From: Adineta vaga
Taxonomy: Eukaryota > Animalia > Rotifera
DNA length: 64,000 bases
Assembly (NCBI GenBank): GCA_021613535.1
Contig: CP075497.1
Coordinates: 744,001 to 808,000 of the forward strand
Direction: 5' to 3'
The notes below the pieces were generated by a model that saw only the letters and a program-made list of their open reading frames with translations, searched no databases and had not been told where the DNA came from. Each line of letters opens with the position of its first letter. Position 1 is the stretch's first letter. The position numbers and the translations under genes were made by a program. Positions 8,967 to 61,320 of the stretch are shown piece after piece.

Positions 8967-9052
8967 TGAGAGTGGGGGTGGGTGTGAGTGTATACAGATT
9001 GCTCGCAACTACAGCCTTATCCACCCACACCCACACCCACACCCACCCTCAA
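8967..9052. repeat. Telomere-like inverted-repeat hairpin element
   Basis: TGAGAGTGGGGGTGGGTGTGAGTG ... CACCCACACCCACACCCACACCCACCCTCAA. Confidence 0.9.
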
Positions 9053-9581
9053 AATTAGTATTTGTACTTGTACAAACTGTTTGATTTGATGATGATGAAA
9101 TTGTTTGATTACAAAAAATTAAACAACGAATTTGTTCAATAATAATCAATTTAATTACAGCTGAGAGAAGACGTCGTGCTAATCGAATATTACTCCATTG
9201 TTGCCAATAAAGACGTGTACATGTTGCAAAATATTGATCAATTGTTGCTAAACAAATACATGTAAGAGAACTTATGACTGAAATTTGAAAGAAGAATATT
9301 CGAAATTTACAATAAAATTATGAATTACTTGTAAAATCAATGTTAAAACCACTAATTAAAATACGTGATAATAAACCAGTTGATAATTGATCAAGATTTC
9401 ATATTGACATAATAGTTAAATAAAATGTACAAGAATTTTCTCGAAATATTCGAAGACTTAACAATACAAATGTATTGAGAGAACCACCAATAAGATCGAG
9501 TGATAAAATAGGAATACCCGTATAATAGATAAATACTTGTTGATAGGCAATACCCAAAGATGTAACTACTGCTAATGTCAT
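9053..9581 (-). pseudogene. Rhodopsin-like GPCR pseudogene, TM1-TM4/ECL2 only
   Basis: One frame with stops at 9399-9401 (TGA) and 9318-9320 (TAA) reads ..YCKFRIFFFQISVISSLTCICLATIDQYFATC..VCTSTNTNF and then runs into the hairpin element. Confidence 0.85.
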
Positions 9582-10014
9582 GATTTATTTAATCCGTTGA
9601 AATGAACTAGAAGTTTTGTTTCAGTATCTCAAATATTCGATTCTTTCATGAACGTTATCTTGTTCCTTGTTATTATCATTGATACACTATAATAAATAAA
9701 TTATATCGGTCAAGTTTGTATTCTTTTGATCCTTGAAAATCTACGTCATTATAATTCTGCTCTGTTATTATGACAATAAGAAAATAATATAGTGGAAATA
9801 AGTTTTTAATCTTCAGTAAAAGGAATGTTTTAGTCGTTTCTTTTTTTAATACATTCAATTATTTTTCTTAATAAAGAAACAAAAGTATTCGAATGTAAAA
9901 TATCATGTTTGATATTTTCTATTTTCCTATGTCGATCATAAACCAATGAATTTTGTTTTTCTTCGTATATAAAAAGATAAAATTCTTTTTAGATGAAAAA
10001 AAATCGAATTTATT

Positions 10015-10984
10015 ATGTCTTTAACAGTCATCGGTGAAAAATTAACAGCTGTAATTGGTTCCATATTTTTTATCACAGGTTTCATAGGAAATGGAATAAA
10101 TATTCTTATATTTTCAAGTAGAAATTCAGAGCGTCGAAGTAGTTGTGCATTTTATTTATTAATTGCATCAATTATCAATACATTATATCTTTGTATTATT
10201 TTAATACCTCGAATTGAAACAGGAGCAAGTGGAATTGATTTAACTCGTAATTCAAGAATTTGGTGTAAAACTCGAGCATTATTTACTGGTTCACTTCCAC
10301 CAATGTCTTTAACATGTGCATGTTTATCAATAATTGATCAATATTTATCAACATCAAAAAATATTCATATTCGTCAATTGAGTAATAGGAAATTATCTCG
10401 ACGAATTATAGGTATTTTTCTTATCATCTGGACAATTCATGGTATTATTGCTTCAATATTTTATGAAATAACACCAACACGATGTACATCATCGAATGCA
10501 AACTATGCACTTTATGCTACAATATATCTTATTATTATTAATGGTTGTATTCCAATATTTATCATAATTATATTTGGATGTTTAACCAATAGAAATATTC
10601 GTCAAACACAAGTTCTTGCTAATAGACACGTAGATCGTCAATTAACAAAAATGATTTTAATGCAATCAATTATAGTTGTTATTAGTAATATAATATATGG
10701 AATTAATAATATATATCGTTTTATTACGAATGGAATTATTAAAGATATTGATAGACAAATCAAAGAGAATTTTATTACAACAATTCTTACGCTTATTTCT
10801 TATTTTTATTCGACGGTATGTATAGACAATTATTGGTTTAGAAAAATATTAATTTAAAATATTTCTGTTCTTTTAGGGAAGTTTTTACATATTTTTCGTC
10901 TCATCAAGTCGATTTCGTCAAAAAGTTAAACAGCGATTATTATTTTTTCGAAGACACAATCAAATAAATATAACTCAGAATTAA
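10015..10984 (+). CDS. Orphan rhodopsin-like 7TM GPCR
   Basis: GN..N in TM1, WCKTR, IIDQY (DRY-like). Intron 10816-10876; exon 2 GSFYIFFVSSSRFRQ ends at TAA 10982-10984. Confidence 0.88.
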
Positions 10985-11749
10985 CTATAAAAGAAAAATA
11001 AAACAGACTGTGAATATAATAAGTGCACAACACAGCTTCTTATTATTCGAATAGTTAGATTATTCATACGTACGTAGATAGATAGAAAGTAATCCAATAG
11101 GCTATGCCAATTGACCTATTCTCTCTTTGTTGTCAAAATATGATGCACGAACATATTACATGTGATATGAATTCAACGGTTTCTGAACCGATATTATACT
11201 TCTTTTCATCTTATCGAAGATAATGGATTAAAATATCGTGACACAACATATCCATGAATTGTATTGTTGCATTGAAGCTAACAAGACGAATTCTTCACAT
11301 TCTTGATTTGGTTAGTTTCATCTTAAATAAGTAGCCATAATATCGTACGATAACTGAGTGCTCAGCTAGGCCTTTCAAATGATCGTCACGTGAAGCAGCA
11401 TCGTGATTTTTTTTTAGAGGAAAACATCTTCTTATTAATGTCAATGAAATAATACAATGCACGGAGAAGTGTCGGTCAATTAAGATAAGAGATGAAATAC
11501 TAGGGCAGGATTTCAATACAAGAACTTTGTGAGTGCATGTCATTAAAGTGTTCTTCTTCTATAAACGTATTGCATTTTCTAATAAAATATTCTTTTCCTG
11601 TCTTTAATCCAAACTAATAAACACAATCTGATAGCATTAATATAGAGATGAGGAAGATTTTTCTTCTTTTATTAATATAATTATCCAGAAAATGAATAAC
11701 GTTTGATAGAGAAATTCTTTAAAGAAAAACTTGGCATTTGACAAGAATA

Positions 11750-12543
11750 ATGAATAATATTGGTTCCATTTTGAATTTGATTATACTTTGTATTAATATA
11801 GTTTTAAATTGTATTTTAATGATCAATTATTATTTATCATTTCTTTTATACTAATCGTATAGAAAAGAAAGATCGGATAACTATTATTCATTCAATTACT
11901 ATTTATGTGATTTCTTTACAAACACTATTAGGTGATTTGATTGAACAAAATTTCGATTCCATTTGGTGTTCTATCATTGGTTATATAACTCCAGTCGTTT
12001 TTGCTTTATTATATTGGTCTTTTGTCAATCAAGTAATTGAAAAAGTTTAAATAAAATCTTCCTAATATATATATCTTTGAATTTTTAGGAATTTTTTCGT
12101 TTTTGTCGAATTATCTCTCCATCTTATCGATGGGTACAACATTCTTTATTCCATATTATTATTCCTTGTGTACAATTTATATTTATATGTATTCTCATTT
12201 CTCCCATTCTTTTTTGGCATGGTATTACTTATAAACCGAAAGAATATTATTGTATTTTATCACTTACCAATCTACAAGTTGTACTTTGAACTTCAATTAT
12301 TAATTACGGTATTCCACTTTTAATCATATCAATAATATATTTACGAATAACACTATTTCTTCCTCAACAAGCAGAACACAATCAATCATATTTAGTTAAA
12401 CGACATTGAGAACGTGATCTACTTGTTATTCGACGTATTCTCATTCTTGTTAATGTTTTACTGTTTCTTGGAATGCCGACTGTCGTCCTTACATTGATGT
12501 TCTTCATTACAGGTAAACAACATCCTCAATTCTTACATCTCAA
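11750..12543 (+). pseudogene. GPCR pseudogene
   Basis: WCSIIGY..FVNQ, then an intron, then FFRFCRII..YYC..NYGIPLLIISIIYLRI..RDLLVIRRI..GMP. Early frameshift, TGA stops at 12287 and 12407, TM7 absent. Confidence 0.75.
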
Positions 12544-12828: not shown

Positions 12829-12894
12829 TTGAGAATGAGGATGAAGGTGTGGGTTAAGACTGTAGACTAAAGTATATCCACACCCACATATTCA
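12829..12894. repeat. Hairpin element (loop subfamily A)
   Basis: TTGAGAATGAGGATGAAGGTGTGGGT-TAAGACTGTAGACTAAAGTAT-ATCCACACCCACATATTCA. Confidence 0.85.
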
Positions 12895-13105
12895 CTGATA
12901 TTATTCGAAACTGTTTATTATATAATGATTGATAATTGAGATTGGACACATTGAAATTTAAGTAAATTTAAACAATCTGCATAGTTCAAAGCACATAACA
13001 CACATTTATTGAAAATATTTTTTTCAAAATTTCTAATAAGCAATACATGTACGTATTTATGTCTTAAAAATATGTTAATCGATGTGAAGTGTATTGTCTA
13101 GAATA

Positions 13106-14545: not shown

Positions 14546-14592
14546 AAGAAACGTGAATATGCGTAAGGACTCTATACTCACACACTCTCAAG
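14546..14592. repeat. Degenerate hairpin element
   Basis: Clear right arm ACTCACACACTCTCAAG; decayed left arm TAAGAAACGTGAATATGCGT. Confidence 0.5.
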
Positions 14593-14705
14593 ATTGAAAT
14601 TAATCATTACTATATCTTCGCCAGTCTAATTGTTCAAGATTAATTTAGCGAAGTAAGTCTTAGTTTGTTCGTTTATTACATCGTATTTCTAATTATATGA
14701 ATAAG

Positions 14706-15319: not shown

Positions 15320-15393
15320 TTGAGAGTGTGGATGAGGGTGGGTAGATGTTGGTGAGTGTCAGAGACGACGAGATACATCCACACCCACACCCT
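15320..15393. repeat. Hairpin element
   Basis: TTGAGAGTGTGGATGAGGGTGGGT ... ACATCCACACCCACACCCT. Confidence 0.85.
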
Positions 15394-15848
15394 ATATTTA
15401 TAATTTTCTATATTAGAAGATGAAAGTGAAAAGGATTGAGCTTTTCTTTGTTTAATATGTGTATTTCACATAGAATTGCACTTTAAACTTTTTATTTCGC
15501 ATCTGATTGAAGAACACTGTCAAATTTTGAATGCATATATTGAATACAATCCCTCTTATACACAAACTTCGTTTGTCTTAATGAAATAAACTATGTACTT
15601 TCTATGGTAAATATCGTAATATCATGTCTTATTAAACAAATTAACTAACAATCAAATAATTGTGAACGGTAAGAAAGTGTTGGCAAACATTTACATAAAT
15701 ATTCTATTGTTTAAACATCTTAAGAAAAAAAATCCTGGGCTATTTTTCTGTAAAGAAAAACAAACAATGTCTTTCATATCTTCGCATTTCTTTCTCATTA
15801 CGCACTTTTCTGTTTGATTCAGTTAGCAAAGAGTAACAGTGAATATAG

Positions 15849-18897: not shown

Positions 18898-18967
18898 TCG
18901 AAAATGAGGATGTGGATGTGGATAGGTGCAAGGCAGTGTCTCTATCCACCCACACTCTCATTCTCAA
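18898..18967. repeat. Hairpin element (loop subfamily B)
   Basis: GAAAATGAGGATGTGGATGTGGATA-GGTGCAAGGCAGTGTCTC-TATCCACCCACACTCTCATTCTCAA. Confidence 0.85.
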
Positions 18968-19094
18968 GAAATAAGTTTTGAACAGTTCGAAAAAATGGGA
19001 TAATTTCATTTTATTTCAAGACACAGAGTTAAAAAAGAATATTATAAAATTAATTTTAAGAAAAAAGATTGACAGTACTATAAGTCAACGATTC

Positions 19095-21387: not shown

Positions 21388-24225
21388 TCAAAGTTCGGTT
21401 TGTATAGTTTCGATATTTCTTCGTACATTGTGAATATCGGGATGATCGGCTGGTAGCGATTTTCGAAATATATCCAAAGCTTGTTGCAGACAAGTCACTG
21501 CTTTTGAGAACGATTTTATGTAATAATAAACGAGGCCCATATTGTTATAGGTTCTACCTAAAAAAGGATGATTCTGAGGGAGATGGTTTTTCCCGATTTC
21601 GAGTGCTTTTTCGTAATATGAAAGTGCCTTCAGGTAGTCATTCATGTTTCTATACACCAAACCAGTGTTATTATAAATGTTAACCAATTCCGGATAATTT
21701 GTAGGCACAGTTTTCTTCAGTATCTCAATTGCTTTTTCATGAAACAGGACTGATTCTGAGTAGTTTTTCATTTGCTTAAGTACACCGCCGATGTTAATGT
21801 ACTATTGAGCAAAATCTGGATGATCCAAGGGAAGTATTTGCTGTCGAATTTGCAATGCTTTTTCGTGGTATTCACGTGATTTCGGATAATTTCCTGTGTT
21901 ATAATACACAAGTCCTATATTGTTATAAGAAGTAGCTAACGAAGGATGATTTGAAGGAAGAATTTTCTCTTCGATTTTCAGTGCTTTTTCTTGATAAGAA
22001 AGTGCTTTCGAGTGTTGCCCAATGTTGCCAAGCGTTCCACAAATGTTGTTGTACAGTGTAGTCAAATCTATAGAAGTTGATGGAAGGTTTTGCTCAAAGA
22101 TTACAGCTGCCTTGTCATAATATGAAAGTGCTCTCGAATACTCTCCTTTCTTGTCATATAATCCACCGATATTGCTATAAGATTGACCAACGTCGATGTG
22201 ATTTGGAGGAAATATTTTTTGACGAAGTACCAATGCTTTTTCATAATATGAAAGTGCTTCTGAGTATTGTCCTGCATGGTGATATACTCGGCCAATGTTG
22301 TTGTACGATTGAGCGAAATCAGGATGATTTGAATGAAGAGATTTTCCCACTATTTCCAGTGCTTTCTGATATGACTGTAGTGCTTGGGAATACTTTCCCG
22401 TATTATCGAGCACATGTCCGAGATTGTTATATAATGTTGCCAGATCTGGGTGATTTGCAGGAAGATTTTCCCGGTAAATTTTCAATGCTTTTTTATAAAA
22501 TGGTAATGCTTCTGAGTACTCTCCCTTCTTGTCATGCAATCCGCCGATGTTATTGAAAGATTGGGCGATATCAAGCTGATTTTGTGGTAACACTCTTTGG
22601 CGGGTTTCCAATGCTTTTTTGAAAGCTGAAAGTGCTTCGGAATATTTTTCTATGGCGAAATACACTGCACCAATATTATTATAAGAAGCAGCTAAAATCG
22701 GATGATCAAATGAAAGATTTTGCTCGAAAACTTCGATGATTTTTCTATAAATAGAAAGTGAATAATCCAAATCACCTCGTTTTGTCTTCATATACGCAAG
22801 ATTATTGTAATTAAGTATATTTTTCTCTTGATCAGATGTTTGGTCAATCAATGCTTTACATAATTCTTCAGCTTTGTCGTATCTACCTATTTTAGTTAGT
22901 AGAAGACCAAGTCGATGAAAACCCGTTGCACCAGCAGTCTCCTTTCTTATATGATCAGTTAAAGTGCGAAGTTGCTCATCATTGTCGGCAGTCAATGTGA
23001 GATTCACCTGATATAGTTGGCTGCTCTCTTCAGTTTTCTTTACTTGATTGATACGAAATACGGCATGCATAGAAAATAGAACTTCCTTTTCCTCCTGAAA
23101 ATTGCTTATTCTATCAATAATCGCAAACGGAGTCGATGAAATTAGCGGATCAATAGTCATTTCGAATAATATACCAATTGTTTCAGGTTTTGATGCACTA
23201 CTTTCAGCCATCATGTAAGCAATTTCTCGATCTAAACTAGTAGATATGAAGTTATTGAAAGATATCAGTCCATCCTCTGTTTTCTTAAGTTTCTCAAAAT
23301 CGAAGACTGACAATCCTTGACCGCGATACACTGTAAATGGTTTATCATTATAATGACTGATCTGTGTCTCATGTAGTTGTTTGATTCCATGGTGTAAATC
23401 ACGAATAAAGAATCCCATATTGAGTATCACATCGCTATCCAACATACGAAGTGCTTGGTTCAGACCTGTATATATAAAACATTCACGTGTATACCACCAT
23501 ATGGTCTTTTCAGGACAATAGGCAGTTTCAAATTCACGAATAGTTTTTAGTTGCAACACATTATCGGAATACTGTTTTTGCCAAAATTCCACGAATTTAA
23601 CGATCGCTTGTTGATCATATTCCATTTCAAGTAAGATTTCTTTAAATATTCGAGTATACATAAATGATGGTTCTATTTGATCTAAACTTTCATTCACTGT
23701 GTGTTCATTGCCTTCGATAAAGCTGATTGCAATAGAATCTTGTTGATACTGTCTAACAACTTGACGAAAAGTTTCATAGATTGATATGATCGATGTTTTC
23801 ATATATTTCACCTTTGACCAATTTGAATTCGTTTGCTGATGTTCTAATGTATCATCACAAAGAACATATATCATTTCCAAATGAGAAATATTATGAATAA
23901 CCGTTATTATATGTTGATCAGAAGTATTTGCAATAACCATAAATACTTTTCCACTAGGAATATCAGTAAGAAAGTCAATACATTCATCAGAATCACTATA
24001 AGTGTAAACTTTACTGACGATACTTCGAAGTTGTGCTAAAGTATTTTGATAATCATCGGTCAAGTAATCAGCATTAGAATCCAGCCAGACAATTACAATA
24101 TTTTCAATAGTATACTGTCTCAAAGGTAAAATATTGGACGATAATATTTTCTTTATGAAAGCGTCTTGTGAAAGAATAGATGATCCTTTGGCATCTTCTA
24201 CTCTGTTAGAGTTCTCAGCATCCAT
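21388..24225 (-). CDS. ADP-ribosyltransferase + TPR-repeat protein, with one in-frame TAG inside the TPR array
   Basis: WWYT, VYRGQ, FISTS, EEKEVLF (R-S-E motif), then about 11 42-aa TPRs (SYNNIG). ORFs 21802-24420 and 21388-21771 are in frame across TAG 21802-21804, where other repeats have Ser. Start taken at MDAEN. Confidence 0.88.
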
Positions 24226-24605
24226 TTTGTTGTTCTTGTATGTTAGATTACTCGATATAAAATTGAAGTAGTTAAAAAAGAATATTGCATTCAAGGTTTT
24301 TTTTTCATCGATTTTATAATTTTGTTGTTGCACGAGCACTTCAAACATTGTCCTTGATATATGTTGGAAGAAATACAAGACGTTACTATAAAAACTTGAT
24401 ATCTGTAAATAGAGAAACACAAAGAAATCAAGTTTAATGGTATAAACTAATAAATACAGAGAATCTTGATGGTATGAGGAACCTATATATTATAAAAAAC
24501 CGATATCTTTACCCTCAGCTAATATATTTCTTTTTAATTTCAAGGAATTTTGTAAGAACGCAAATGACATTACAAAACAATATATAAAGAAAAAAAATGT
24601 ATGGT

Positions 24606-27302: not shown

Positions 27303-27350
27303 TTGAGGGTGTGGGTGTTGTTATTCTCTTCACCCACACCTATATTCTTA
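27303..27350. repeat. Hairpin element
   Basis: TTGAGGGTGTGGGTG-TTGTTATTCTCTT-CACCCACACCTATATTCTTA. Confidence 0.85.
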
Positions 27351-27968: not shown

Positions 27969-28024
27969 CGAAGGGTGAGTGTGAGTAAATAAAAGAAAAG
28001 AAAATATTTTTTTCACTCATACTA
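27969..28024. repeat. Degenerate hairpin element
   Basis: CGAAGGGTGAGTGTGAGT ... CACTCATACT. Confidence 0.55.
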
Positions 28025-28491
28025 TATGCAGAATGTATTGACAAAATTATTTTCGGCGATTTATTTCTTGAATACTATGCAATCAATGACGCAGAAATCA
28101 AGGGTGTGGTTGTAGATTTGGGTTAAGATGTCATTCATTTAAAACCATAGATTCTTTGTTGAAGGTTAATCTTCTCCGATCTCGCTTAAGGTTCTTATCG
28201 GACATAGAAGACCATCAAAAGAACGATCGAGTATGTGATGTTGAATACAACAGAATGACCCTACGATTTGTCACTAATATCCTCAATTATTCGACAAAAT
28301 CATAGTCGAACTTCTTTTGATATAGGCTCGAAAAATAGGAGTTTCTGGATCAAGAACTTGATGCTACCGAGACAAACCTTGAAGCCTGTCTTTGTCACAC
28401 GAAATACACTGAAGCACTTGACTTTCTCGTTTGATATATGGCTTCAGTTTATAATAACAAAGAAAAAAAAATATTAAGCACAATAATAAAC

Positions 28492-28548
28492 GAGAGATTG
28501 TGGGTCCAGGTGAGAATTTTCCATTTTTACCCACACCCTCACCTTCAA
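28492..28548. repeat. Hairpin element
   Basis: GAGAGATTGTGGGTCCAGGTG ... ACCCACACCCTCACCTTCAA. Confidence 0.7.
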
Positions 28549-28893
28549 GGTCCGACACTATATAAGAAAACAAGAGGAAAAATCAGACTCTAGATCCTCG
28601 GATTCTATTGATCCTGTTAGATCCTATGTGATACGTCTTTTCTCTTTGTCAACATTGAAGAGAATCCGGGGATTCAGGAAGCGCTTTATCCCTTGACTCC
28701 ACACTTTTGAAAAGAGCAATTCAGCGGTATATTTTTTATTTTTATTTAGAATTCAAAAAAAGCCATTCTCGTGATTATGATTGAAATGTTGTCCTGAAAA
28801 AAGAAAATCATCTCATTCTTGCTTGGGAAATAAATATCTATTATCTAAATAACGATAACCACATTGAAGTAATGCGATAACATAACATAAAAT

Positions 28894-29061
28894 CTTGAGG
28901 GTGTGAGTGGGTGAGGTTATGGATGACGGACTTGACTGTGGTTCCCTGAGGATGTCATTGCGAGTGAAAGTGTAGTGATAATCTCACTCACATCTATACG
29001 CATCCCCACAGGCATAGCCACAGTTTAACAACAACTACGCATATCCACTCACACTCTCAAG
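28894..29061. repeat. Long nested hairpin element (168 bp)
   Basis: Outer arms CTTGAGGGTGTGAGTGG / CCACTCACACTCTCAAG. Inner pairs ACTGTGG/CCACAGT, GGATG/CATCC and GAGTGA/TCACTC. Confidence 0.88.
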
Positions 29062-31146: not shown

Positions 31147-31283
31147 AGGAATAAATGAGCTTTCTTTAGTAATCTTAACGCTAGGAGTATTTGTGCATTC
31201 CATTACAGCTAACGTGATTCAATGTCACAAGCGATGCAGCTAATCGAATAATATGTGAGATATTAGGGATGAGTCATTATTTT

Positions 31284-31408
31284 CTTGAGGGTGTGGGTGT
31301 GGGTAAGAAAAAATTTGAATAGTTTCCTTGTATATAAAGTTGCTAGTTCAATCTGTCTCACTATTGGCACACGCAGAAAAATCTGTCTTCCACAGTCGAT
31401 GGTGAAGT
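31284..31408 (+). repeat. Left arm plus subfamily-D internal sequence
   Basis: CTTGAGGGTGTGGGTGTGGGT followed by the block shared with 34509-34597 and 1277-1360 (reverse complement). Confidence 0.8.
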
Positions 31409-31549
31409 GTGTATAGGGGTGGCACTTAAACTTTAAAACTTTATTTTAAAAATCAAATTTAAAGTTGATATTCAATAACATCATTTAGTCGCTCAATATG
31501 ATTCTTGCTATGGCACTAAATAGTCTATTTCTGCTAAAATCTTTAAAAA

Positions 31550-31612
31550 TGAGGAGGGTGTGGATGTAGATGTTATCTGTTTAATCACACCGACACTCAC
31601 ACTCACACTCTC
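31550..31612. repeat. Hairpin element
   Basis: TGAGGAGGGTGTGGATGTAGATGT ... CACACCGACACTCACACTCACACTCTC. Confidence 0.8.
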
Positions 31613-31771
31613 TATTCAATACAATCGATAAACCATCGAAGCAACCTCATCCTGCACCATACTGTAAAAATTACAAGTTGATAAAAGATTTCATTATATT
31701 GTTAAATTATCATATAACGTTAACTATTTGATGATGCAAGTACTTCTCAGATTCTTCTACTTTTCATTGCA

Positions 31772-32158: not shown

Positions 32159-32963
32159 TATTTGCAATATTATCAGTTTCTTGTGTAGAATAATTCCCCC
32201 ACAAAAATATTATTTATAAAGAAATGCATACTTATTGATGATAGGCAAAGGTAGAAAGAGAATAGCACGTGCTTTTTTATTTTCTTTCCAACATCGACAG
32301 AAAAGAGAGAAAAAGAAATAACGTATCAAAAATCTATTGAAGACAATATGAGTTTATTGATAGATATCATCCATTACAATACATATATATGTTCAAGAGA
32401 ACTTTGAGACAAACGAATCTATAACGTAGTATCACCTATAACGATTGGTAAGCGAAAAAAACTTTTTAGGAAGTTACCTCAAAATACAATGAATAACACT
32501 TATAGATATTTCTAGTCATAAAAGAATTGATATGATCAATTTCCTATTAAATAATATGAATGTAAATTTAGATGATTATTGACAATGGTATAATGTTTTT
32601 TTAGTTATTTGAATGTATATTTTAGTTGTATCATCTTTGAACATATATATATATATGAAACAAGCGATCAAGATTCATGTAGTGAATATACCTGTTTTAA
32701 AGAAACATTTCAACTTTTATATTCTATTTTCAACCAAACAATAATTCTAAATAAATTCACAAGTGATAGTCAGTCAAAACCACACCTTCAAACACAAGTA
32801 TGGTTTTCATTGTTTTCTTCTCGTCAGATTGATCAAAATTACACTTGTTATTATAAACAAGCACAAGTTACTTTGGTTATTCTAGAATTTTCGAATGAGA
32901 AAACTTCGATAATTAAAATTTCTGCTTATTTTGGAATCATTGGTCCACTTCTTCTGTTTCTTT

Positions 32964-33023
32964 TTGGGTGTGGGTGTTGAATAGATGTAATATCCACATC
33001 CTCATCCTCACTCACACCCTTAA
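32964..33023. repeat. Hairpin element
   Basis: TTGGGTGTGGGTGT ... ATCCACATCCTCATCCTCACTCACACCCTTAA. Confidence 0.8.
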
Positions 33024-33538: not shown

Positions 33539-33775
33539 TAAAATGTATACGCTTCTTTTAATTATAGAGATTTCGCTACTTTTCCTATCATACAGTTTAT
33601 TTCATTAACACCCAACTTACTGAAAAGGCAATAAGTTCGATTAGAAAGAGCGAAACTCTTGAAGTTCTCGCCGTTTCAAGAATAGGAAAGGTTGTCGATT
33701 CGTAAAGCTTAATTATAGGAATTTCTAAAAAAATGAGGCATAATAGAAGACTTAGGTTCAATCACTACAGTCTTC

Positions 33776-33834
33776 TGGAGTGTGGGTGTGGGTGATGCGA
33801 AGAGTATTAACCACACTGACATCCACACCCTCAA
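33776..33834. repeat. Hairpin element
   Basis: TGGAGTGTGGGTGTGGGT ... ACCACACTGACATCCACACCCTCAA. Confidence 0.88.
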
Positions 33835-34419
33835 GATGTTTTTTTCTCTCTTCTCTCTACTTAGTCAAGTCAATAAAATACAGGTTGTTACTCATTGAAT
33901 ACCAATACTGTCTCTTTTAATATTAGGCAATGAAATGACTTGTCGACGATTGATATTAATACCCAGTTACGTGTATCAATCATGGTCAATATACCTATAT
34001 CGTTAGTATAACAATTACAATTATTGATGAATTAACAAAAATCTATAAACTCATTATACTAAAAATTGTAAAAGTTTTTGTTTAGGTGATTATTGAACTA
34101 TTCGAAGGAAATTCCACAGAAACAATCAAATTAATCTAATAATACTTTACAGAACAACGTACTACGTATGATTTCTGTAGAGAACCAAACCCTAATAAAT
34201 TCTGCAAGTGTCCTTATGTTATTTTTTCGTCGCTATCGATATCATAAGCCATAGTTTTCTTGTCTTCTTGATATACTTTAGAGACGTTGATGTTTGTTTA
34301 TTCTTCGACTGAGAGAAGGGTATAGAAAAAAAACAGTTACGAAAAAAACATGAAATTCGTTTGTACGTATGCATATCTGTCGCAGGTAAAAGATCAAAGG
34401 ACAGGAATAAATAAATTGA

Positions 34420-34756
34420 AGGCAAGGGTATAGAACTGGTGTTGAGTGAAATTGGTTTTACAAAAAAATTGAGTATTTTATTTCCGAAATTTAATAAATA
34501 TTTGAGTTGTTTCATCGTATATAAAGTTGCTGGATCAATTTGTCTCACTATTAGTACATGCAGAAACTAACTGTTCTTCACAGTCGAGGGTTAAATGAGC
34601 CGGCACGACGAGCGTTACTTATTTTAACTGAAGTCATTAATTTGATTTTAATTTTAATTAAATAATTTTTATGATATTAGCCATCTGATGAGAACTATGA
34701 TAAGTTCGAAACGCGCCTTGGATGCTTACACTCACCCACACCTTTACCCTCGACTT
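34420..34756 (+). repeat. Long variant (subfamily D) element
   Basis: Decayed left arm, an internal block of about 160 bp shared with 1271-1447 (reverse complement), and right arm ACACTCACCCACACCTTTACCCTCGA. Confidence 0.7.
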
Positions 34757-36317
34757 TATTTCTATAAGCTATTTGACGAGACTGTGAAACTCACTCGAAA
34801 CCGGTCATGGCGGTTGTTACTTACACCCATACACCCTAGCAAGGTAACCTTTCTTTTAACTGTCCCACGTGAAAAGAGAAGCCTTCATGAAATATTAACG
34901 TCAACTAGGAAAAAGACTGTCATGAATAAAAACGTTTACAAAAAAATGAAAAAAAAGCCATCGATTAATACAATTCACTGTTAATCATACGGACAGAATT
35001 TTTTCGTTGGTTGTCTTTCAAAAAGGACACTTTTGTTTTAATACTCTATTTTAGTTTTTTCCAACATAAACACTTTCAAAGCATAAAATGCTATTAAAAA
35101 TTACTTTTTTCTGTTAAACCATTCTTCTCTTGATCAACTATATGCACGCTGTTTACAGTATTTTTTTTTAAACAAATTCGGCAATTGTATGTCTTTTTGT
35201 TGGTATATAACAACGAATTGTATTTGTGGCTCTTTGAGATAGCTAAAATGGGAAGGAAATGTCAGGGGTATAGTACTATCCATAATTAAAAAAGTTGTCG
35301 GTTTTTTTTACCAAAAATTAATCGCATTACTATGTCTCGTTTTAAAATTTACATAATTTCTCTGAAAAGTTTACGTCGTGCCTCCTCAAAGTCGAAGTTA
35401 CAATCCCTTTCCAAATTGGTAGCTTTAAGCTGCCAAAACGCGGCTATTTTGTCAAATTTGTCGAGCAACGTCAGAAATCTTTCTTTATATATCCATCTTT
35501 ACTTGAGATTTAATAAAACATTACGTAGATGTTTTCTTCTTCATTGTTTCGTGATAAGATGGAAAATTTAGTCGGCGATTTTCTCTTTTTGCTTCTTATT
35601 TCGTTAACAGTAGTAAGAATTAATAAGATAATAATTCTGAACGACTTTTTTTTCTATCCGTTATTTCATTTGCTTCAAAACAAAAGAGATCAAAACCAAA
35701 ATAAATAGGGAAATCAACATATTACGACAACCAAATAAAAGACAGGTAGCATCTCTGAAACATTTTCCTCAATTGAAACAAAATTCCGAACTGATAAGGA
35801 TGAAAAACTTCAATAAACTGTAAGAATTGATATGTGCGTTCTTGACGCAACCGATTTATGATATTATTAAAACGATAATAGACTGGGATCATCTTACATA
35901 TTATAGTTTGTTTGTTAAGGAATAAAAGTCATCTTGTGAAAAGTACATCATTTCTTTCAATTTACATTCGTTTATGTGTAGTTTTATTTGTGAAAAACGA
36001 ACTGAAAGAAGTGTGTAAGTACATAAGAGCAAATGATTGGTCTCACGTCTTCTTCCATCCCCTCTCGCAAATCATAACAGATTTTTCTAATTAATACTTG
36101 ATTAGAACGTTCGCTTTTAAATAAACATGAATGAAAGTTGTTAGCTTACCAGGAATTATTTACTTATGATCACCTGAAGTTTTATATACAATGATTATCG
36201 AGTGTCTATGACTGCTATCTACATAGTTATTCTGTTCCTATTTCGAAATTTCGATCGGAAATAGTCGGTATACTTTCAGCTAGACAATAAGGTTATCTAT
36301 GAACCAGATATCTAATA

Positions 36318-39197: not shown

Positions 39198-39434
39198 TAT
39201 TGCATCGACTTACAGTACAATGTAAAAGACTTTACCCTTAATATTTCAAATACTCATCATAAAGGAAATGATAAATTAATGAACAAACAATATGTACTTA
39301 TTAATTTTACATCTTCATTGTATTTCATCTTTAATATTTTTGATTTCTTTTCTTGACGCTTTATGATATCAACACATCACTTTCGATATTTTCTAACCTT
39401 TTCTTTACATTTCTTCGTTATTTAAAAGACTAAA

Positions 39435-39495
39435 TGAGAGTGTGGGTGTAAGTGTGGAGAGGGTGTTTTTCTTTTACTGACACCCTCATTCTCAA
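39435..39495. repeat. Hairpin element
   Basis: TGAGAGTGTGGGTGTAAGTGTGGAGAGGGTGT ... ACACCCTCATTCTCAA. Confidence 0.82.
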
Positions 39496-39642: not shown

Positions 39643-39693
39643 TTGAGAGTGTGGTGTGGTAAAAGGCTGTAGGCTAAAATATACCCACATCCA
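39643..39693. repeat. Hairpin element (loop subfamily A)
   Basis: TTGAGAGTGTGGTGTGGT-AAAAGGCTGTAGGCTAAAATAT-ACCCACATCCA. Confidence 0.82.
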
Positions 39694-40305
39694 TGTGCTG
39701 TCATTCTTATTGCGATTATATATCAAGTTTTATTCAAATACGACACAGCTTTTTTTACGGCAGTAATCATACAGATACTCCATTGAATTGTTGTACAACA
39801 ACAGTATCATTTGAGATTCCATCAGATCTATCTTTTGCTTTCATTACTATTCTAATTTCATTGTCATTGATGTTTATCTTTGTACTGATGATTATTTCGA
39901 ATATACGTCAGATACAGACACGTATGCGTCCAACGGCTATACAAATCACCAATGGTAATGAAGTTCACAATCCCATATATGTTGGTCTTAGACGCTTAAA
40001 TCAACAGGAAAAAAAACAGGTCGACAATTATTGCTTGTGCTTTTGATTCAATTTCTCATTATATTTGTATGTACATTTCAATTTGCTTTACCAAAATTTT
40101 ATTCAACATTGACAAGAGACGTCCCAAGACCATAGTATTACAACTTAAAATTGAGAATTTTATCTTTAATCTATTACTTCTTTTTTCTAGTATTCCTTCC
40201 GTAAAACCATTTTATATTTATACATTAACTGGAGAAAAAGTATTTCGAAAAGCTTTGTTTAATATATTCAACATATATGTAATCGATAGAAAAATAATCT
40301 TTTAA
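39694..40305 (+). pseudogene. 5'-truncated GPCR pseudogene (TM4 to C-terminus)
   Basis: Frameshifted pieces CAVILIAIIY, ..LMFIFVLMIISNIRQ, ..LCF*FNFS and FYIYTLTGEKVFRKAL, which is the TM7/helix-8 motif of the local GPCRs. Confidence 0.7.
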
Positions 40306-40536: not shown

Positions 40537-40592
40537 TTGAGGGTGTGGATGGGTGTACATGAGACTAGGCTCTTAACCCACACCAGCACCTA
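40537..40592. repeat. Hairpin element (loop subfamily C)
   Basis: TTGAGGGTGTGGATGGGTGT-ACATGAGACTAGGCTCTTA-ACCCACACC. Confidence 0.88.
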
Positions 40593-41936: not shown

Positions 41937-42137
41937 ACATTTCCAAAATCTTTCTTTAAATCTTAGAAAATAAATAATCAACAGTTCTCTATGTTTAACA
42001 CTTCTATCAATATATACGAGCTAAGCTTTTACTTCTTCTGAAATATAACTGAGAGTAAGAGTGAGACAAGCAGGGTGTGGGTGTAACTAGCTGCCATTAT
42101 CCAGATTTCACTTCTGCTAAGAAGATCATCAAATAGC

Positions 42138-42197
42138 TTGAAGGTGTGGGTTAAGTGCATAGTCTCATGTGCACACATACCCACCCACCCACACCCT
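42138..42197. repeat. Hairpin element (loop subfamily C, inverted relative to 40537)
   Basis: TTGAAGGTGTGGGT-TAAGTGCATAGTCTCATGT-GCACACATACCCACCCACCCACACCCT. An extra G-rich arm lies at 42050-42084. Confidence 0.88.
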
Positions 42198-42779
42198 ACA
42201 AACCTTCACCTTATTGACGAAACATCTATAAGACGGATAGTAGAATTGTCATATACTAAAGAAATTGTACATCTTCAATCTTATGATATTCGACTCAAAT
42301 GTTCACATATAACTGACTACCTGATAGAAAAAATATCATGTAAAATATCGTTCATTATATAGGCAAATTTTCAGAAACAGCCTGTAAAAGAAATCTAGAT
42401 TGCATAATTTTTATATATGATTTAGCAATAATCGATATTTTTGACATACGGGCCCACCTTTTAAAGACTTTAAATATAGTGGATTTTGTAGAGCTTTCGA
42501 CGCTCTACAAGATGGCTTATATGAAAATGTGGGTGTAAATTTTGTTAAAAAAATTCTATGTATTATATTATGGGCACATATGCTCTACGAAAGTGTATTT
42601 GCTGTAATGTATGGGGAATATTTGATGACATATAACACGAATGATACTTTATACACATGAATCTTTCACAGGACGATAGCCTAGAGAATTCTGCGTCGAA
42701 ATATCTTCGACTAAGATTAAATCTTTGATATTTTTCTCTAAGGAATTTTCCACGTCTGCATGTACAGATGATTCAAACC

Positions 42780-47649: not shown

Positions 47650-47692
47650 TGAAGATTTTTTTGTTCTTCTAGTCTAAATAAGTATAGCAACA

Positions 47693-51797: not shown

Positions 51798-51857
51798 TTG
51801 AGGGTGTCGGTGGGTGCAAGTCAGTGTCTCTATTCACCCACACCCACCCACCCTTAA
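51798..51857. repeat. Hairpin element (loop subfamily B)
   Basis: TTGAGGGTGTCGGTG-GGTGCAAGTCAGTGTCTCTATT-CACCCACACCCACCCACCCTTAA. Confidence 0.9.
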
Positions 51858-51943: not shown

Positions 51944-52852
51944 ATGAATCGTTTTGGTGATATTGATTATTCATTGACAAGACTTCCGGCTGTTTATGAT
52001 TATCGAAGTGCAAAACTTGTTTCACTTGAAGAATCTCTACAAGCAATTCAATCACAAATTAATGATTTACCGTTTTACGTCGAAACAGCAAAACGACGTT
52101 GTCGTTTTCCATCTGAATATGGTTTAACAAAGGATGAATCTGCTTCAGTTTATATTTATACAGTGGAATGGGATGAAACGAGTTTATATCGAATTTTAAA
52201 CAAAGCATTGAGAAATGAAGATCGAAATGCACTGACAATTTGGTTTCCTTATTTAAGATTATTAGATTCAGCTTTAGAAAAATTACCAAATGTTCGAGGA
52301 ATTGTTTGGCGTGGTGTTTCAAATGATATTGGAAAGAATTTCTCTAAAAATCAGAAAATAACATGGTGGAGTGTGAATTCTTGTTCATCATCGATTAATG
52401 TTATCAAATCTTGTCTTGGAAATGAAACAAATTCAACAATGTTTCTCATTGAAATATCAAATGGAAAGAAAATTTCAGGTTATACTGACCGTGAAGAAGA
52501 AGATGAAGTGATTTTAAAATTTGGAACTGATTTACGTGTTCAAGGTGATGTTTTAGAACATCCAAAAGGTTTATTTCATGTTCATTTAACGGAAATTAAT
52601 GAGGAAGAAGAAGAAAAACAAACGAGTAAGTCAAACTTTTTCATTTCAAAATTCAATGAGAATAAATGCGGAAACTTCGAATTTAATTCGAGAGAGAATT
52701 ATGTGTACTGCAAAAAAGTGTATGAGAGAAAGAGAGAGATGAACCATTGTGAAATGTCTGAAAATCAAAATTATCATAAGAAATCTTTTCGATGTGTACG
52801 ATCTATGATGAACGTTTTTTTGAATGAATTTTTATGTTTGTTTCTAGCGTGA
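51944..52852 (+). CDS. Arginine-type (R-S-E) ADP-ribosyltransferase; 3' end uncertain
   Basis: LTKDESASVYIYT, LNKALR, VWRGV, VNSCS, EEDEVIL. A GTAAGT donor near 52626 suggests the ORF tail is intronic. Confidence 0.82.
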   Translation: MNRFGDIDYSLTRLPAVYDYRSAKLVSLEESLQAIQSQINDLPFYVETAKRRCRFPSEYGLTKDESASVYIYTVEWDETSLYRILNKALRNEDRNALTIWFPYLRLLDSALEKLPNVRGIVWRGVSNDIGKNFSKNQKITWWSVNSCSSSINVIKSCLGNETNSTMFLIEISNGKKISGYTDREEEDEVILKFGTDLRVQGDVLEHPKGLFHVHLTEINEEEEEKQTSKSNFFISKFNENKCGNFEFNSRENYVYCKKVYERKREMNHCEMSENQNYHKKSFRCVRSMMNVFLNEFLCLFLA

Positions 52853-55856: not shown

Positions 55857-55906
55857 TTGGATGTGAGTGTTATTTTAATATGCTCACACACCCATAACCT
55901 ACCCTC
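55857..55906. repeat. Degenerate hairpin element
   Basis: TTGGATGTGAGTGT ... GCTCACACACCCATAACCTACCCTC. Confidence 0.6.
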
Positions 55907-57640: not shown

Positions 57641-57664
57641 CTCTCTCTCTCTCTCTCTCTCTCT
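57641..57664. repeat. (CT)n microsatellite
   Basis: About 12 CT units. Confidence 0.9.
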
Positions 57665-59097: not shown

Positions 59098-59324
59098 CCA
59101 TATAAATATTTTTTGGAATAGTACAACGATAGTTGCCTAAATAAGATATGGAAATTGGACGGATATGAAGAATATTTCCACGTGGATAAAACGGTTGTTG
59201 ATCTTGAATAATCTTGAAGAAAATAAAACAGAAGATATCATATCTTTAGTAATAAATATAAAATGGATTATGTGTTCAAATAACGAAATATTTCATTTGA
59301 GAAAAAAAACATACTTGACTATTA

Positions 59325-60131
59325 TTAAAATACCATTGAATATGTTCATAATCTTCTTGTGCTGCACCTTGACATTGAATTTCGACAAAATCACCATCGA
59401 TCATATGTGTCGTAACAATATGTAAATATGTATGACTATGATTTGCTATAGAACAACTTTTAAATTAGAATTGAAAACTATTTTTCTTTAACTTACACGT
59501 CAATTCAAGATTATCTGTATGAGAATCATCAGTTTGTGAAATATAATCACTTTCTTCATACAATAGAACAATAGCTGATTCATATAAATACATATAATCT
59601 TCTGCTACACATATATATTCTCCAATTTTACTTGGATCATCTAATGTTATACGTGATATTAATGTGATTTGTGATATTGTTATTAATTTAATAGTATCAT
59701 CTATTGAAGCGTTGCGCTAAAAATATTTGTTTTCTTTTAAATGAATAAGAAGAAGATGTGTATTTGAAATATTTTACATATTTAGGTGTTTTTTGAATCC
59801 AATAAACAGATGTTTCTGAATTAGCTCCATAGGCTGTACAAGTTAAATCTACCGTTTGACCATGTCGAACACGAAGAACCATTGGATCAACTTCAATTCG
59901 AATTTCCACTCGATCATCTAACATTGATTGTGTTGATGCAAATATATCAGTATCATTGTTCATAATAGAAATAGTTGATGTTTCAAGATTATCAAAAACA
60001 ATTGTTTCACTTTTGGTCGATGTTTGTTCTGTAGTTTCCATGTGAAAATTATCAACTAAAATTTGGATTAGAATGATTTCTGTGCGTTGACAAAAGTGAG
60101 ATTTTCTTCTTGTTGAGTCACAGTTATTCAT
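59325..60131 (-). pseudogene. Fragment of a multi-Ig-domain protein
   Basis: VRHGQTVDLTCTAY..VYW; next exon GEYICVAED; next exon DGDFVEIQCQG..IQWYFNN. Continuity is broken and the boundaries are approximate. Confidence 0.55.
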
Positions 60132-60894
60132 GATGATTTTAAGACATTACATTTCGAATCAGATCGATTTTCGTGAAGGTCACAAATGAGTTTATGAATT
60201 ATATTAACTTACTTTTATAGTATTCTGGTTGAAATCTTATCCTTTTTTCGACATTCTAATATGAAAAATGTATTATTCTTCTGAAGAATAGAAATATATA
60301 GTTTACTTTCGATATTGATATATTTACAATGGAACAGTAACATAGAAATAAATTTAAAAGGATTTTAGTATTCATTTCTAAAAATAGTTTGTCTGATAGA
60401 AGTTTAATACGAAGAAAAACTGGATATTTTCTTTTCTATTATATGAATATACATTTGTCAATCATTAGTCTATAACTAAGATAAAGAACATATGAAGAAT
60501 TGTTTTCACTGTCGGATTATCTATCTGATAGAATTACTATAATATCTTTTTTACTAGCGATAACTGGCTTATTTTTTATCTTCTATCATCACGTCAATAA
60601 CAAAAAAAAGACAAATATGAATTGTTTTTCGACACAATCTGTCTATGAAAAAAAATACTAAACGTTAACATTGATAATATCAATATTTTACAGATATCTA
60701 ATTCAATTTCTCTTCCTTTTGAGAATGTAAATATAAGTAAGAGAATATCTCAATGGTAAATGCAAAAAGAAGTATTTTGATTCTCTTCATCTATGATCAA
60801 TCTTACGCAATTACTATATACAAGATGAGTCATTCACACATCATTTTCTTTCAAGTAACTTATTAATGATGATGAAATCAGAAAAAAAGTATTT

Positions 60895-60965
60895 CGTCAC
60901 TGCAGGGAATCGAACCCTGGTCTTCGGTCCGACAAACCGTGATACTACCATTGTACTACAGTGAC
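60895..60965 (-). tRNA. tRNA-Asp(GTC), divergent
   Basis: GTCACTG TA GTAC AATGGTA GTAT C ACGGT TTGTCGG ACCGA AGAC CAGGG TTCGATT CCCTG CAGTGAC G. A and B boxes are intact and a T7 run starts 6 nt downstream. Confidence 0.85.
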
Positions 60966-61320
60966 TTATGTATTTCTAAGTTCAATACTTATCAACCTTT
61001 GTCTCACATCGTACCATTCTATTATTGTTATTTTTTGTCGGTATGCATATGTGTGTTGTTTTGATCCTTTCACGGCGACGGGTTATATGTAATTTGCTAT
61101 CTTTGTTATTTTGAAAAGCATTTATTTCATAGTGTGAGGCTTCTCGTTGAACTGTATCTAGATCGACCATTCGATGGAGTGTGGGTGAGTCTCTTGTATT
61201 CGCAAGGCTTTTTTTGTTCCTCGTCGTTTTTCTTTATCTTGGTGATAAAAAAAACAAGGAGAGCAAGTGCTCTCAATCTTTAAATACGTAACTACATTTC
61301 ACTATCGAAACATTATTAGG

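What the first reader, a model, noticed from the sequence alone, without database searches (positions are those of the whole stretch)
8967..61190. About 20 telomere-repeat-armed palindromes divide the region into gene-sized cassettes (candidate eukaryotic attC/REP-like system)
Seen: consensus TTGAG(G/A)GTGTGGGTGTGGGT-N10..40-ACCCACACCCACACCCTCAA at 8967, 12829, 14546, 15320, 18898, 27303, 27969, 28492, 28894, 31550, 32964, 33776, 39435, 39643, 40537, 42138, 51798 and 55857. Half-sites or decayed copies lie near 201, 17691, 20841, 21343, 26118, 28100, 31284, 40324, 57792 and 61175. The G-rich arm always comes first. No copy interrupts an intact exon, most adjacent unrelated genes are separated by one, and I found no flanking TSD at the copies checked (8967, 28894, 33776, 51798). 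Known: the reported bdelloid telomere repeats are TGTGGG (Adineta) and TGAGGG (Philodina), and G-arm-then-C-arm is the geometry of a telomere-telomere fusion. Each gene between two elements thus reads (CCCACA)-gene-(TGTGGG). Inference: these are recombination or joining sites that build arrays of defence and horizontally acquired genes. Alternatives are insulators bound by telomere proteins, or a TSD-less mobile hairpin family.
Basis: partly seen in the sequence, partly recalled or inferred. Interest (0 to 1): 0.95.

Follow-up and report, generated by a model that had tools for sequence, protein, structure and literature searches.

The report
Telomere-repeat-armed joint elements in rotifer subtelomeres
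A bdelloid rotifer (Adineta-type) genome carries hundreds to thousands of 45-90 bp inverted repeats with telomere-repeat arms. They sit between genes near chromosome ends, most likely mark places where free DNA ends were capped by telomere-type reverse transcription and rejoined, and so bear on how these animals build arrays of foreign and fast-evolving genes.

Summary
The window (G000:C6:744001-808000, a 100.8 Mb genome in six contigs that fits published Adineta vaga AV20) holds about 18 loci of the form ATCTTGAGGG(TGTGGG)n - spacer - (CCCACA)nCCCTCAAGAT.

- **Polarity:** genome-wide, G-arm-then-C-arm outnumbers the reverse order about 200 to 1 (793 against 4).
- **Placement:** copies avoid ORFs, lie outside the assembled mRNA contigs, show no target-site duplication, and cluster within 3 Mb of contig ends.
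- **Spacers are not unique:** they form dispersed families (133 and 58 copies) with unrelated flanks.
- **No structural selection:** the two arms of a copy do not co-vary.
- **Joints:** blocks of paralogous sequence stop at the elements, and a GPCR reading frame is cut two codons from an arm.
- **Retroelement link:** the same arms flank a decayed Athena/Terminon-type unit (hammerhead motif plus C-rich tail).

Best reading (0.45): minimal, endonuclease-independent Athena-type retro-inserts added to free DNA ends, so each copy marks a healed break or joint. An attC/REP-like recombinase system is not supported.

I found no description of the palindromic mini-element in the papers I could search, but three key papers were not held. 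First-reader notes from this scan report the same arrays in other windows of this genome.

The parts
8966..9054 (.). Full element: G-arm 8966-8992, 27-nt spacer, long C-arm 9020-9052
   Evidence: DNA fold z = -3.8
9055..9317 (-). GPCR (7tm_1) gene fragment. The domain match (HMM positions 56-143 of 260) ends two codons before the arm. No GPCR-like sequence on the other side of the element
12829..12895 (.). Full element, TTGAGAATGAGG arm variant; spacer related to family A. Lies 215 nt downstream of the stop of the short-chain dehydrogenase gene on the minus strand
14546..14594 (.). Degenerate copy; only the C-arm end ...CACACACTCTCAAG is recognisable
15320..15396 (.). Full element with a 33-nt spacer
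   Evidence: fold z = -0.05
18898..18969 (.). Full element, spacer family C (GCAAGGCAGTGTCTCTAT). Lies 130 nt downstream of the fasciclin-domain gene on the minus strand
27303..27344 (.). Short full element with a 5-nt spacer
27969..28025 (.). Degenerate pair (GGGTGAGTGTGAGT ... CACTCATAC)
28098..28125 (+). Lone G-arm followed by TAAGAT
28492..28550 (.). Element with a decayed G-arm and a good C-arm ending CCTTCAAG
28895..29060 (.). Long copy: good G-arm 28895-28922; C-arm-like end CACACTCTCAA at 29049-29060
31285..31412 (+). Perfect G-arm followed by the 5' part of an Athena-like repeat (TATA box, ...CAGTCGA GG...). 82-87% identical to six copies fetched from elsewhere in the genome; eight matching places are listed
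31550..31614 (.). Full element. Lies 105 nt beyond the RNA-like contig of the gene at 31719-32228
32962..33023 (.). Full element, spacer family B (AATAGATGTAAT)
33774..33837 (.). Full element ending CCCTCAAGAT. A 150-nt repeat starts right after it; in locus L038 that repeat occurs without the element
34438..34760 (+). Decayed Athena/Terminon-type unit: TATA-box repeat, hammerhead-like core CTGATGAG..CGAAAC (34685-34712), then C-arm ACACTCACCCACACC..CCCTCGA (34728-34753)
   Evidence: Rfam does not call it a hammerhead
39434..39495 (.). Element 240 nt after the TPR gene stop; the C-arm is decayed
39643..39700 (.). Element with short arms and a family-A-like spacer. A GPCR 3' fragment lies downstream (TM7 match at 40000-40302, E = 2e-4)
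40537..40590 (.). Full element. Its spacer is the reverse complement of the type seen at 42138
42138..42202 (.). Full element. An 87%-identical duplicated block (41179-42202 against C3:19771567-19772625) ends at its outer C-arm end
51798..51857 (.). Full element, spacer family C, between the GPCR gene end (51543) and the ART gene start (51944)
55857..55905 (.). Weak, decayed copy
61175..61210 (+). Lone G-arm plus spacer GAGTCTCTTGTATTCGC, a spacer type also seen in full elements on C1. No C-arm

Best explanation

The C-arm, (CCCACA)nCCCTCAAGAT, matches the C-rich 3' tail that these retroelements use to pair with G-rich 3' DNA ends. The G-arm is its inverted copy.

Proposed mechanism (inferred, not shown): a short RNA carrying the tail, or the whole arm-spacer-arm unit, is copied by an Athena-type or telomerase-type reverse transcriptase from a free 3' end at a break or an eroded telomere. 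The product is then joined to a second end, either by a template jump onto that end's G-rich tail or by end joining.

This gives flank - G-arm - spacer - C-arm - flank, with fixed outer ends, no target-site duplication and only one possible polarity. Each copy would therefore mark a healed break or a joint between two DNA segments. Arrays build up where such joints are tolerated, which is between genes in subtelomeric DNA.

Shown here: the structure, polarity, spacer families, distribution, joint behaviour and the shared ends with an Athena-like unit.
For: - Strict polarity: 793 against 4 genome-wide.
- Fixed cap ATCT|TGAGGG on both sides and no TSD.
- Spacer families of 133 and 58 copies on all six contigs, against 3 and 0 controls. 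The 30 fetched family-A copies have unrelated flanks apart from two paralogous pairs and one overlapping pair, so whole units are copied rather than formed independently.
- The same arms and polarity bracket a unit with a hammerhead-like core directly followed by the C-arm. About 25 canonical hammerhead + (CCCACA)n ends occur in the genome. This is the published Athena/Terminon 3' end (PMC6431247, PMC8557442).
- Published property: EN-deficient PLEs prime from exposed 3' ends at telomeres or double-strand breaks (PMC3846280).
- Joint behaviour: homology blocks end at or in the elements, and a GPCR gene is truncated two codons from an arm with no continuation across it.
- 74% of exact copies on C1-C4 lie within 3 Mb of a contig end, against 34% expected.
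- The arms decay independently, so nothing maintains hairpin pairing.
- The same architecture is present in A. steineri and in two metagenome contigs.
Against: - No RNA of the elements was seen. The only RNA-like data were assembled contigs, and they stop short of the elements.
- The mini-elements contain no hammerhead motif.
- The family A spacer never follows a hammerhead core (0 hits) and is not significantly like the post-cleavage tails of Athena ends (p = 0.35).
- Published terminal Athena additions put telomeric repeats in direct, not inverted, orientation, so a second step (template jump or two-ended capture) has to be assumed.
- No allelic or empty-site comparison could be made. Ectopic recombination between ordinary mobile copies could therefore also produce the block boundaries and the truncated gene.
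Confidence: 0.45

Rival explanations
1. Plain 'cap-and-join'. Broken ends or free fragments are healed by telomerase, and two capped ends then fuse head to head. The spacer is junction filler, later homogenised among joints by gene conversion that uses the arms as homology.
For: - Polarity, variable arm length in hexamer steps and absence of TSD.
- Joint behaviour and the truncated GPCR.
- Neotelomere formation at breakpoints is reported for A. vaga (PMC13564844).
Against: - The fixed non-telomeric cap ATCTTGAG on both sides is not expected from telomerase acting on random ends.
- Spacer families of constant length with 133 and 58 copies need an added conversion process acting through about 20 bp of homology.
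- Arm variants such as TTGAGAATGAGG recur at three elements in the window, which suggests copying from templates.
Confidence: 0.2
2. An ordinary DNA-level mobile element: a very short MITE or foldback family whose terminal inverted repeats happen to be telomere-like. It would be moved by a transposase or an HUH/tyrosine enzyme that leaves no target duplication. Block boundaries and cut genes would arise later, by ectopic recombination between copies.
For: - Defined inverted termini, subfamilies with unrelated flanks, intergenic location and thousands of likely copies.
- TIR DNA transposons are the dominant TE class in A. vaga (PMC8494291).
Against: - No TSD.
- Arm length varies by whole telomere hexamers.
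- No clean empty site in any comparison.
- No transposase-like domain among the 29 ORF translations scanned in the window.
- The ends are shared with a retroelement-type unit.
Confidence: 0.15
3. Host-selected regulatory or chromatin elements. The arms would be paired binding sites for a telomere-repeat-binding protein, acting as insulators, roadblock terminators or heterochromatin/small-RNA boundaries between subtelomeric genes.
For: - Placement between genes of every relative orientation, within 90-600 nt of ORF ends in many cases.
- Outside the assembled mRNA contigs.
- The arm sequence, not the pairing, is what is conserved.
Against: - Rare in the gene-dense chromosome cores, so not a general gene-boundary device.
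- Many copies are strongly decayed, and lone arms are common.
- Not retained next to the orthologous cellulase gene in other Adineta species.
Confidence: 0.08
4. One reading: attC/REP-like recombination sites recognised as folded single strands by a site-specific recombinase or HUH nuclease that excises and inserts gene cassettes.
For: - Gene-sized units bounded by imperfect palindromes.
- One gene (CD225-like) sits between two elements with the same spacer type in inverted orientation, and it is duplicated with its right-hand element on another contig.
Against: - No compensatory change between arms.
- Fold z-scores are only -0.05 to -3.8.
- Genes lie in both orientations, and the two covered by RNA-like contigs are assembled as separate contigs.
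- No recombinase was found in the window.
- The duplicated CD225 block has an element only at one end.
- Cassette content is not conserved with its flanks across species.
Confidence: 0.04

Closest known systems
3' ends of Athena/Terminon endonuclease-deficient Penelope-like retroelements of bdelloid rotifers (Gladyshev & Arkhipova 2007; Arkhipova et al. 2017, as summarised in PMC6431247, PMC8557442 and PMC3846280)
   Same: - A C-rich reverse-complement telomeric tail, (ACACCC)n or (TCACCC)n.
- Attachment to free G-rich ends.
- Subtelomeric location.
- Host genes caught between neighbouring copies.
- One unit in the window has a hammerhead-like core directly followed by the C-arm.
   Different: - The mini-elements have no RT and no hammerhead motif, and are only 45-90 bp long.
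- Their two telomeric tracts are inverted (G then C). Published 5'-capped Athena copies have them in direct orientation.
- Both ends carry a fixed ATCTTGAG cap.
Interstitial telomeric repeats, or 'short stretches of telomeric repeats', known to mark bdelloid subtelomeres (PMC2861651, PMC7943196, PMC8494291, PMC11258130)
   Same: The same hexamer TGTGGG, the same enrichment near chromosome ends, and the same association with TEs and horizontally acquired genes.
   Different: Those papers count hexamers. None that I could read describes an inverted pair with strict polarity, a fixed cap and spacer families.
MITEs and foldback elements
   Same: Short, non-coding, with terminal inverted repeats, in subfamilies, and intergenic.
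   Different: - No target-site duplication.
- Arms made of telomere repeats, with variable repeat number.
- No clean empty sites seen.
- No autonomous partner identified.
Break-and-heal sites of programmed DNA elimination (nematode SFE motif, ciliate Cbs) and telomere-bearing elements of ciliates. Recalled from my own knowledge, not tested here
   Same: A cut in the spacer would leave a G-strand telomere seed at the 3' end on both sides. The DNA between two elements has the C...G end orientation of a capped linear molecule.
   Different: No programmed elimination is known in bdelloids. The copies are decayed, and no evidence of breakage at these sites was obtained.
Integron attC sites and bacterial REP/BIME elements
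   Same: Imperfect palindromes between gene-sized units; extragenic.
   Different: - The sequence of the arms is conserved, not their pairing.
- No integrase or RAYT-type gene nearby.
- Genes lie in both orientations and show signs of their own transcription.
- This is a eukaryotic chromosome.

Membership tests
Athena/Terminon (EN-deficient PLE) 3' terminus | C-rich reverse-complement telomeric tail, (ACACCC)n or (TCACCC)n, at the 3' end | tested here: met
   The C-arms are (CCCACA)n with a TCACCC-type last repeat and end in CCCTCAAGAT.
Athena/Terminon (EN-deficient PLE) 3' terminus | Hammerhead ribozyme motif immediately upstream of the tail | tested here: not met
   Met only for the long unit at 34685-34753 and for one in L018. 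The 45-90 bp elements have no room for the motif, and family A never follows a hammerhead core. Rfam calls no hammerhead in the window.
Athena/Terminon (EN-deficient PLE) 3' terminus | Telomeric repeats capping the 5' side in the same (direct) orientation as the 3' tail | tested here: not met
   There are 56 inverted G->C pairs against 11 direct pairs (7 CC and 4 GG) in 175 kb.
MITE | Terminal inverted repeats | tested here: met
   ATCTTGAGGG(TGTGGG)n and its reverse complement.
MITE | Target-site duplication flanking the repeats | tested here: not met
   No conserved or duplicated bases beyond position -5 in 74 arms.
MITE | Filled and empty sites with collinear flanks; an autonomous partner with the same ends | tested here: inconclusive
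   No clean empty site in five informative paralogue comparisons. Allelic look-ups found nothing. A partner was not searched for genome-wide.
Telomere-telomere fusion scar (head-to-head interstitial telomeric repeat) | G-strand repeats followed by C-strand repeats of the species' own telomere unit | tested here: met
   TGTGGG is the published A. vaga repeat (PMC8494291).
Telomere-telomere fusion scar (head-to-head interstitial telomeric repeat) | Independent events: arbitrary outer boundaries and unrelated junction filler | tested here: not met
   A fixed ATCTTGAG cap, and spacer families of 133 and 58 copies.
Integron attC | Structure conserved through compensatory change while sequence varies | tested here: not met
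   Within-element arm similarity is 0.376 against 0.379 between elements, permutation p = 0.6.
Integron attC | Adjacent tyrosine-recombinase integrase; promoterless cassettes in one orientation | tested here: not met
   No integrase domain among the 29 ORF translations scanned. Genes lie on both strands, and RNA-like contigs cover single genes.
REP/BIME with RAYT | Associated HUH (Y1) transposase gene and a conserved 5' tetranucleotide at the hairpin foot | not tested
   No HUH domain in the window's scanned ORFs. The genome was not searched for one.

The most novel reading that the evidence does not exclude
The elements are not just scars but working 'break-and-heal' joints. A break in the spacer would leave a telomere seed on both sides. 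Gene-sized pieces could then survive desiccation-induced fragmentation as capped fragments and be rejoined, reshuffled or joined to captured foreign DNA by an Athena/telomerase-type reverse transcriptase. This would be a eukaryotic cassette-shuffling and gene-capture system for subtelomeric defence genes and horizontally acquired genes.
Probability: 0.1. Interest if true: 0.9.

Novelty: new variant of a known kind. Interest (0 to 1): 0.62.

Why it matters
Bdelloid rotifers hold the highest known load of horizontally acquired genes in animals, concentrated near chromosome ends. How foreign or displaced DNA is physically joined into their chromosomes is still open.

If each of these elements marks a joint made on free DNA ends, the subtelomeres carry a readable record of past break-and-join events, at single-gene resolution. 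The joining mechanism then becomes testable: look for new arm-spacer-arm joints after irradiation or desiccation.

Practical points:
- Counting TGTGGG hexamers, as published surveys do, hides a structured element with strict polarity.
- These short repeats break short-read assemblies exactly at gene boundaries.

Tried and rejected
1. **Spacer as the 3' self-cleavage tail of Athena hammerheads.** This idea was mine, and note s1-482816 makes it too. A hammerhead core followed by the family A spacer, in either orientation, gave 0 hits. The family A spacer against 17 post-hammerhead tails scored no better than shuffles (p = 0.35 and 0.96). Rejected for family A; open for other families.
2. **Selection for hairpin pairing.** No covariation between arms.
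3. **Known RNA family.** An Rfam gathering scan of the window and six loci found only a tRNA. An E-value scan of 34400-34800 gave no hammerhead call.
4. **The two GPCR fragments (9055-9581 minus strand, 39693-40302 plus strand) as halves of one broken gene.** Both seem to contain an ECL2-like segment, and the match of 39678-40043 is weak (E = 4). Not shown.
5. **Allelic comparison through exact-protein look-up.** Nothing on record for two window proteins. Close A. vaga assemblies appear to be left out of the collection.
7. **'Joints' in DNA run X7 that link arms of different elements.** Read as other loci sharing arm words, not as structural variants.
8. **Literature.** No held paper describes the palindromic mini-element. 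Gladyshev & Arkhipova 2007 and Arkhipova et al. 2017 could not be opened, and I did not try to open Gladyshev et al. 2008. Prior description cannot be excluded.

Full report
**Source and setting.** The window is G000:C6:744001-808000 of a 100.8 Mb genome in six contigs. It lies 0.74-0.81 Mb from the start of a 13.9 Mb contig. G+C is about 30%. The nearest relatives of a window protein are from Adineta steineri, Rotaria and Didymodactylos. ORF translations show the usual bdelloid subtelomeric mix: FG-GAP repeats, a short-chain dehydrogenase, a fasciclin protein, a GH5 cellulase, a questin-oxidase-like protein, TPR-ART proteins, GPCRs and a CD225-like protein.

**Observation.** The arm consensus TTGAGGGTGTGGGTGTGGGT with up to 5 mismatches occurs 34 times in the window, against 0-1 in shuffles. 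All 18 'full' sites have at least one recognisable arm. Twelve have both arms by a strict hexamer-lattice test, and six are decayed. Of the ten 'half-sites', 28100, 31284 and 61175 are clear, 201 is a short start, and the rest are weak.

Polarity is the strongest feature:
- Window: 9 G->C pairs and 0 C->G.
- Whole genome: GGTGTGGGT-N8..38-ACCCACACC matches 793 times per strand, against 4 for the reverse order.

**Anatomy.** Aligning 74 arms on TGAGGG shows that conservation runs four bases further out: A 57%, T 49%, C 51%, T 74%. It stops at -5. The unit is therefore ATCTTGAGGG(TGTGGG)1-4 - spacer (5-35 nt, rarely longer) - (CCCACA)nCCCTCAAGAT. No direct repeat flanks it. Arm length varies in hexamer steps.

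The two arms of one element are no more alike than arms of different elements (0.376 against 0.379, permutation p = 0.6). Nothing therefore maintains pairing, and single-strand fold z-scores are only -0.05 to -3.8.

Spacers are not unique. The spacer GGGTTAAGAGTATAGCCTGAC has 133 copies with up to 3 mismatches on all six contigs, against 3 for the reversed control. Among 30 fetched copies, flanks are unrelated right up to the caps, apart from two paralogous pairs and one overlapping pair. A second spacer, ATAGAGACACTGNCTTGCAC, found in the elements at 18898 and 51798, has 58 copies against 0. Arm variants such as TTGAGAATGAGG recur at three elements in the window. Whole units are therefore copied; they are not independent accidents.

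**Placement.**
- One of 18 loci falls in an ORF of 120 aa or more, although such ORFs cover 41.5% of the window (p = 0.0009).
- Elements lie between convergent, divergent and tandem genes.
- Contigs from two RNA-like runs cover the cellulase gene (29952-31159), and a contig from one of them covers the next gene (31719-32228). All stop 100-125 nt short of the neighbouring elements. These are assembled contigs from runs only guessed to be RNA, so this is weak evidence that the elements lie outside mature mRNAs.
- The exact 21-mer TCTTGAGGGTGTGGGTGTGGG has 156 copies against 0 control. On contigs 1-4, 70 of 94 lie within 3 Mb of an end, where 34% is expected (p = 2e-15). This matches published hexamer-density surveys (PMC7943196, PMC8494291, PMC11258130).

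**Joint behaviour.**
- A block of 87% identity between 41179-42202 and C3:19771567-19772625 carries the CD225-like gene and the element at 42138. It ends at the outer end of the C-arm.
- Loci L017 and L024 share 1.5 kb up to a point inside the C-arm and then diverge.
- A 150-nt repeat abuts the element at 33837 and at L037. In L038 it occurs without an element, and homology ends at the same point.
- L013 and L016 carry the element inside a 3 kb duplication.
- No comparison showed a clean empty site.
- On the minus strand, a GPCR reading frame (9317 to 9055) matches Pfam 7tm_1 positions 56-143 of 260 and runs into the arm two codons later. Nothing GPCR-like lies across the element. This confirms note s1-482688.
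- A GPCR 3' fragment (TM7 match, E = 2e-4) lies downstream of the element at 39643. I could not show that it is the missing half.

**Link to Athena/Terminon.** The perfect G-arm at 31285 starts a repeat of about 150 nt with a TATA box and a splice-donor-like GAG|GTAAAGT. Six fetched copies are 82-87% identical to it; eight matching places are listed elsewhere in the genome. Two further copies lie in the window, at 1248-1460 on the minus strand and at 34438-34626.

The copy at 34438 continues into CTGATGAG-(4-bp helix)-CGAAAC at 34685-34712, followed by ACACTCACCCACACC...CCCTCGA. About 25 loci in the genome have the intact form CTGATGAG..CGAAAC-GCGTC-ATGGCTGCT..-(CCCACA)n. This is the published 3' end of Athena/Terminon elements: a hammerhead motif followed by reverse-complement telomeric repeats that pair with G-rich overhangs (PMC6431247, PMC8557442). 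The window copy is decayed, and Rfam does not call it a hammerhead.

The arms, their polarity and their caps are thus shared between the mini-elements and a retroelement-type unit. Published work also states that these endonuclease-deficient elements prime from free 3' ends at telomeres or breaks (PMC3846280), and that host genes are often caught between neighbouring copies (PMC6431247).

**Other species.**
- An A. steineri contig carries the same hairpins, one of them ending CCCTCAA.
- Two contigs from one JGI metagenome carry ATCTTGAGGG...CCCTCAAGAT units.
- 30 kb of Rotaria DNA showed only one lone arm-like site. That is too little to conclude absence.
- The cellulase gene has different neighbours in A. 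vaga, A. steineri and a third Adineta-like contig, and no conserved flanking elements.

**Interpretation.** The data fit a family that is copied as a unit, is added where DNA ends are free, and so marks joints. I favour minimal Athena-type retro-inserts at 0.45. A short RNA ending in the C-rich tail would be copied from a free 3' end, and the product joined to a second end. This explains the single polarity, the fixed caps (they would be the RNA ends), the missing TSD, the spacer families, the joints and the subtelomeric bias.

The weak points of this reading are that no such RNA has been seen, that the mini-elements carry no hammerhead motif, that the family A spacer is not hammerhead-tail-like, and that the inverted arrangement needs an assumed second step.

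Rivals, with confidence:
- Plain telomerase healing and fusion, with spacers homogenised by conversion: 0.2.
- A DNA MITE without TSD, plus later ectopic recombination: 0.15.
- A host insulator, terminator or protein-binding role: 0.08.
- An attC/REP-like recombinase system: 0.04.

**Novelty.** Telomeric hexamers, Athena ends and gene capture in bdelloid subtelomeres are known. I found no description of the inverted, capped mini-element with spacer families and roughly 200:1 polarity in any paper I could search. The 2007 PNAS and 2017 MBE papers could not be opened, and I did not try to open the 2008 Science paper. First-reader notes of this scan report the same arrays in other windows of this genome (s1-498348, s1-482498, s1-498349, s1-494272) and an armed hammerhead cassette elsewhere (s1-482888).

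Noticed in passing
window 60895-60965 (-): A tRNA gene (Rfam RF00005, 59.6 bits), about 210 nt from the lone G-arm at 61175.
   Followed up: no
window 40680-40755 and about 40930-40960: Short tracts of a different G-rich repeat, (TTTGGG)n, followed about 200 nt later by its C-rich complement (CCAAAC-like). Same G-then-C order as the main family. They lie between the element at 40537 and the CD225-like gene.
   Followed up: no
window 29107-29657: A three-block dispersed repeat, 75-93% identical to more than ten loci on several contigs, with raised word depth in a DNA run. No ORF of 90 aa or more. It lies between the long element at 28895-29060 and the cellulase gene. Possibly a non-coding TE.
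   Followed up: partly
window 33838-33963; L037; L038: A 125-150 nt repeat containing AATAAA. It abuts the hairpin in two copies and occurs without it in a third.
   Followed up: partly
L003 (G000:C1:17562203-17565223) and L018 (G000:C3:720910-723930): Family A elements with very long arms (up to about 100 nt of telomere repeats). L003 also has a tandem 28-nt unit, CACCCACACCCACACATCAGCACACCGA.
   Followed up: no
window 21805-24489 (-) and 51944-52849 (+): ADP-ribosyltransferase (ART) domains, one fused to long TPR arrays. An A. steineri contig also has an ART gene next to its cellulase orthologue.
   Followed up: no
window 29998-31143 (+): An intronless GH5 cellulase, with plants and fungi as the closest non-rotifer relatives (about 40% identity). 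Orthologues occur in Adineta, Rotaria and Didymodactylos, so this is an old horizontal acquisition. It is covered by contigs from runs guessed to be RNA.
   Followed up: partly
G000:C6:1-600 and G000:C1:1-600 (L041, L042): The first 600 bases of these two contigs show no telomere repeats, although the AV20 paper reports such repeats at scaffold extremities. The repeats may lie further in, or at the other ends.
   Followed up: no
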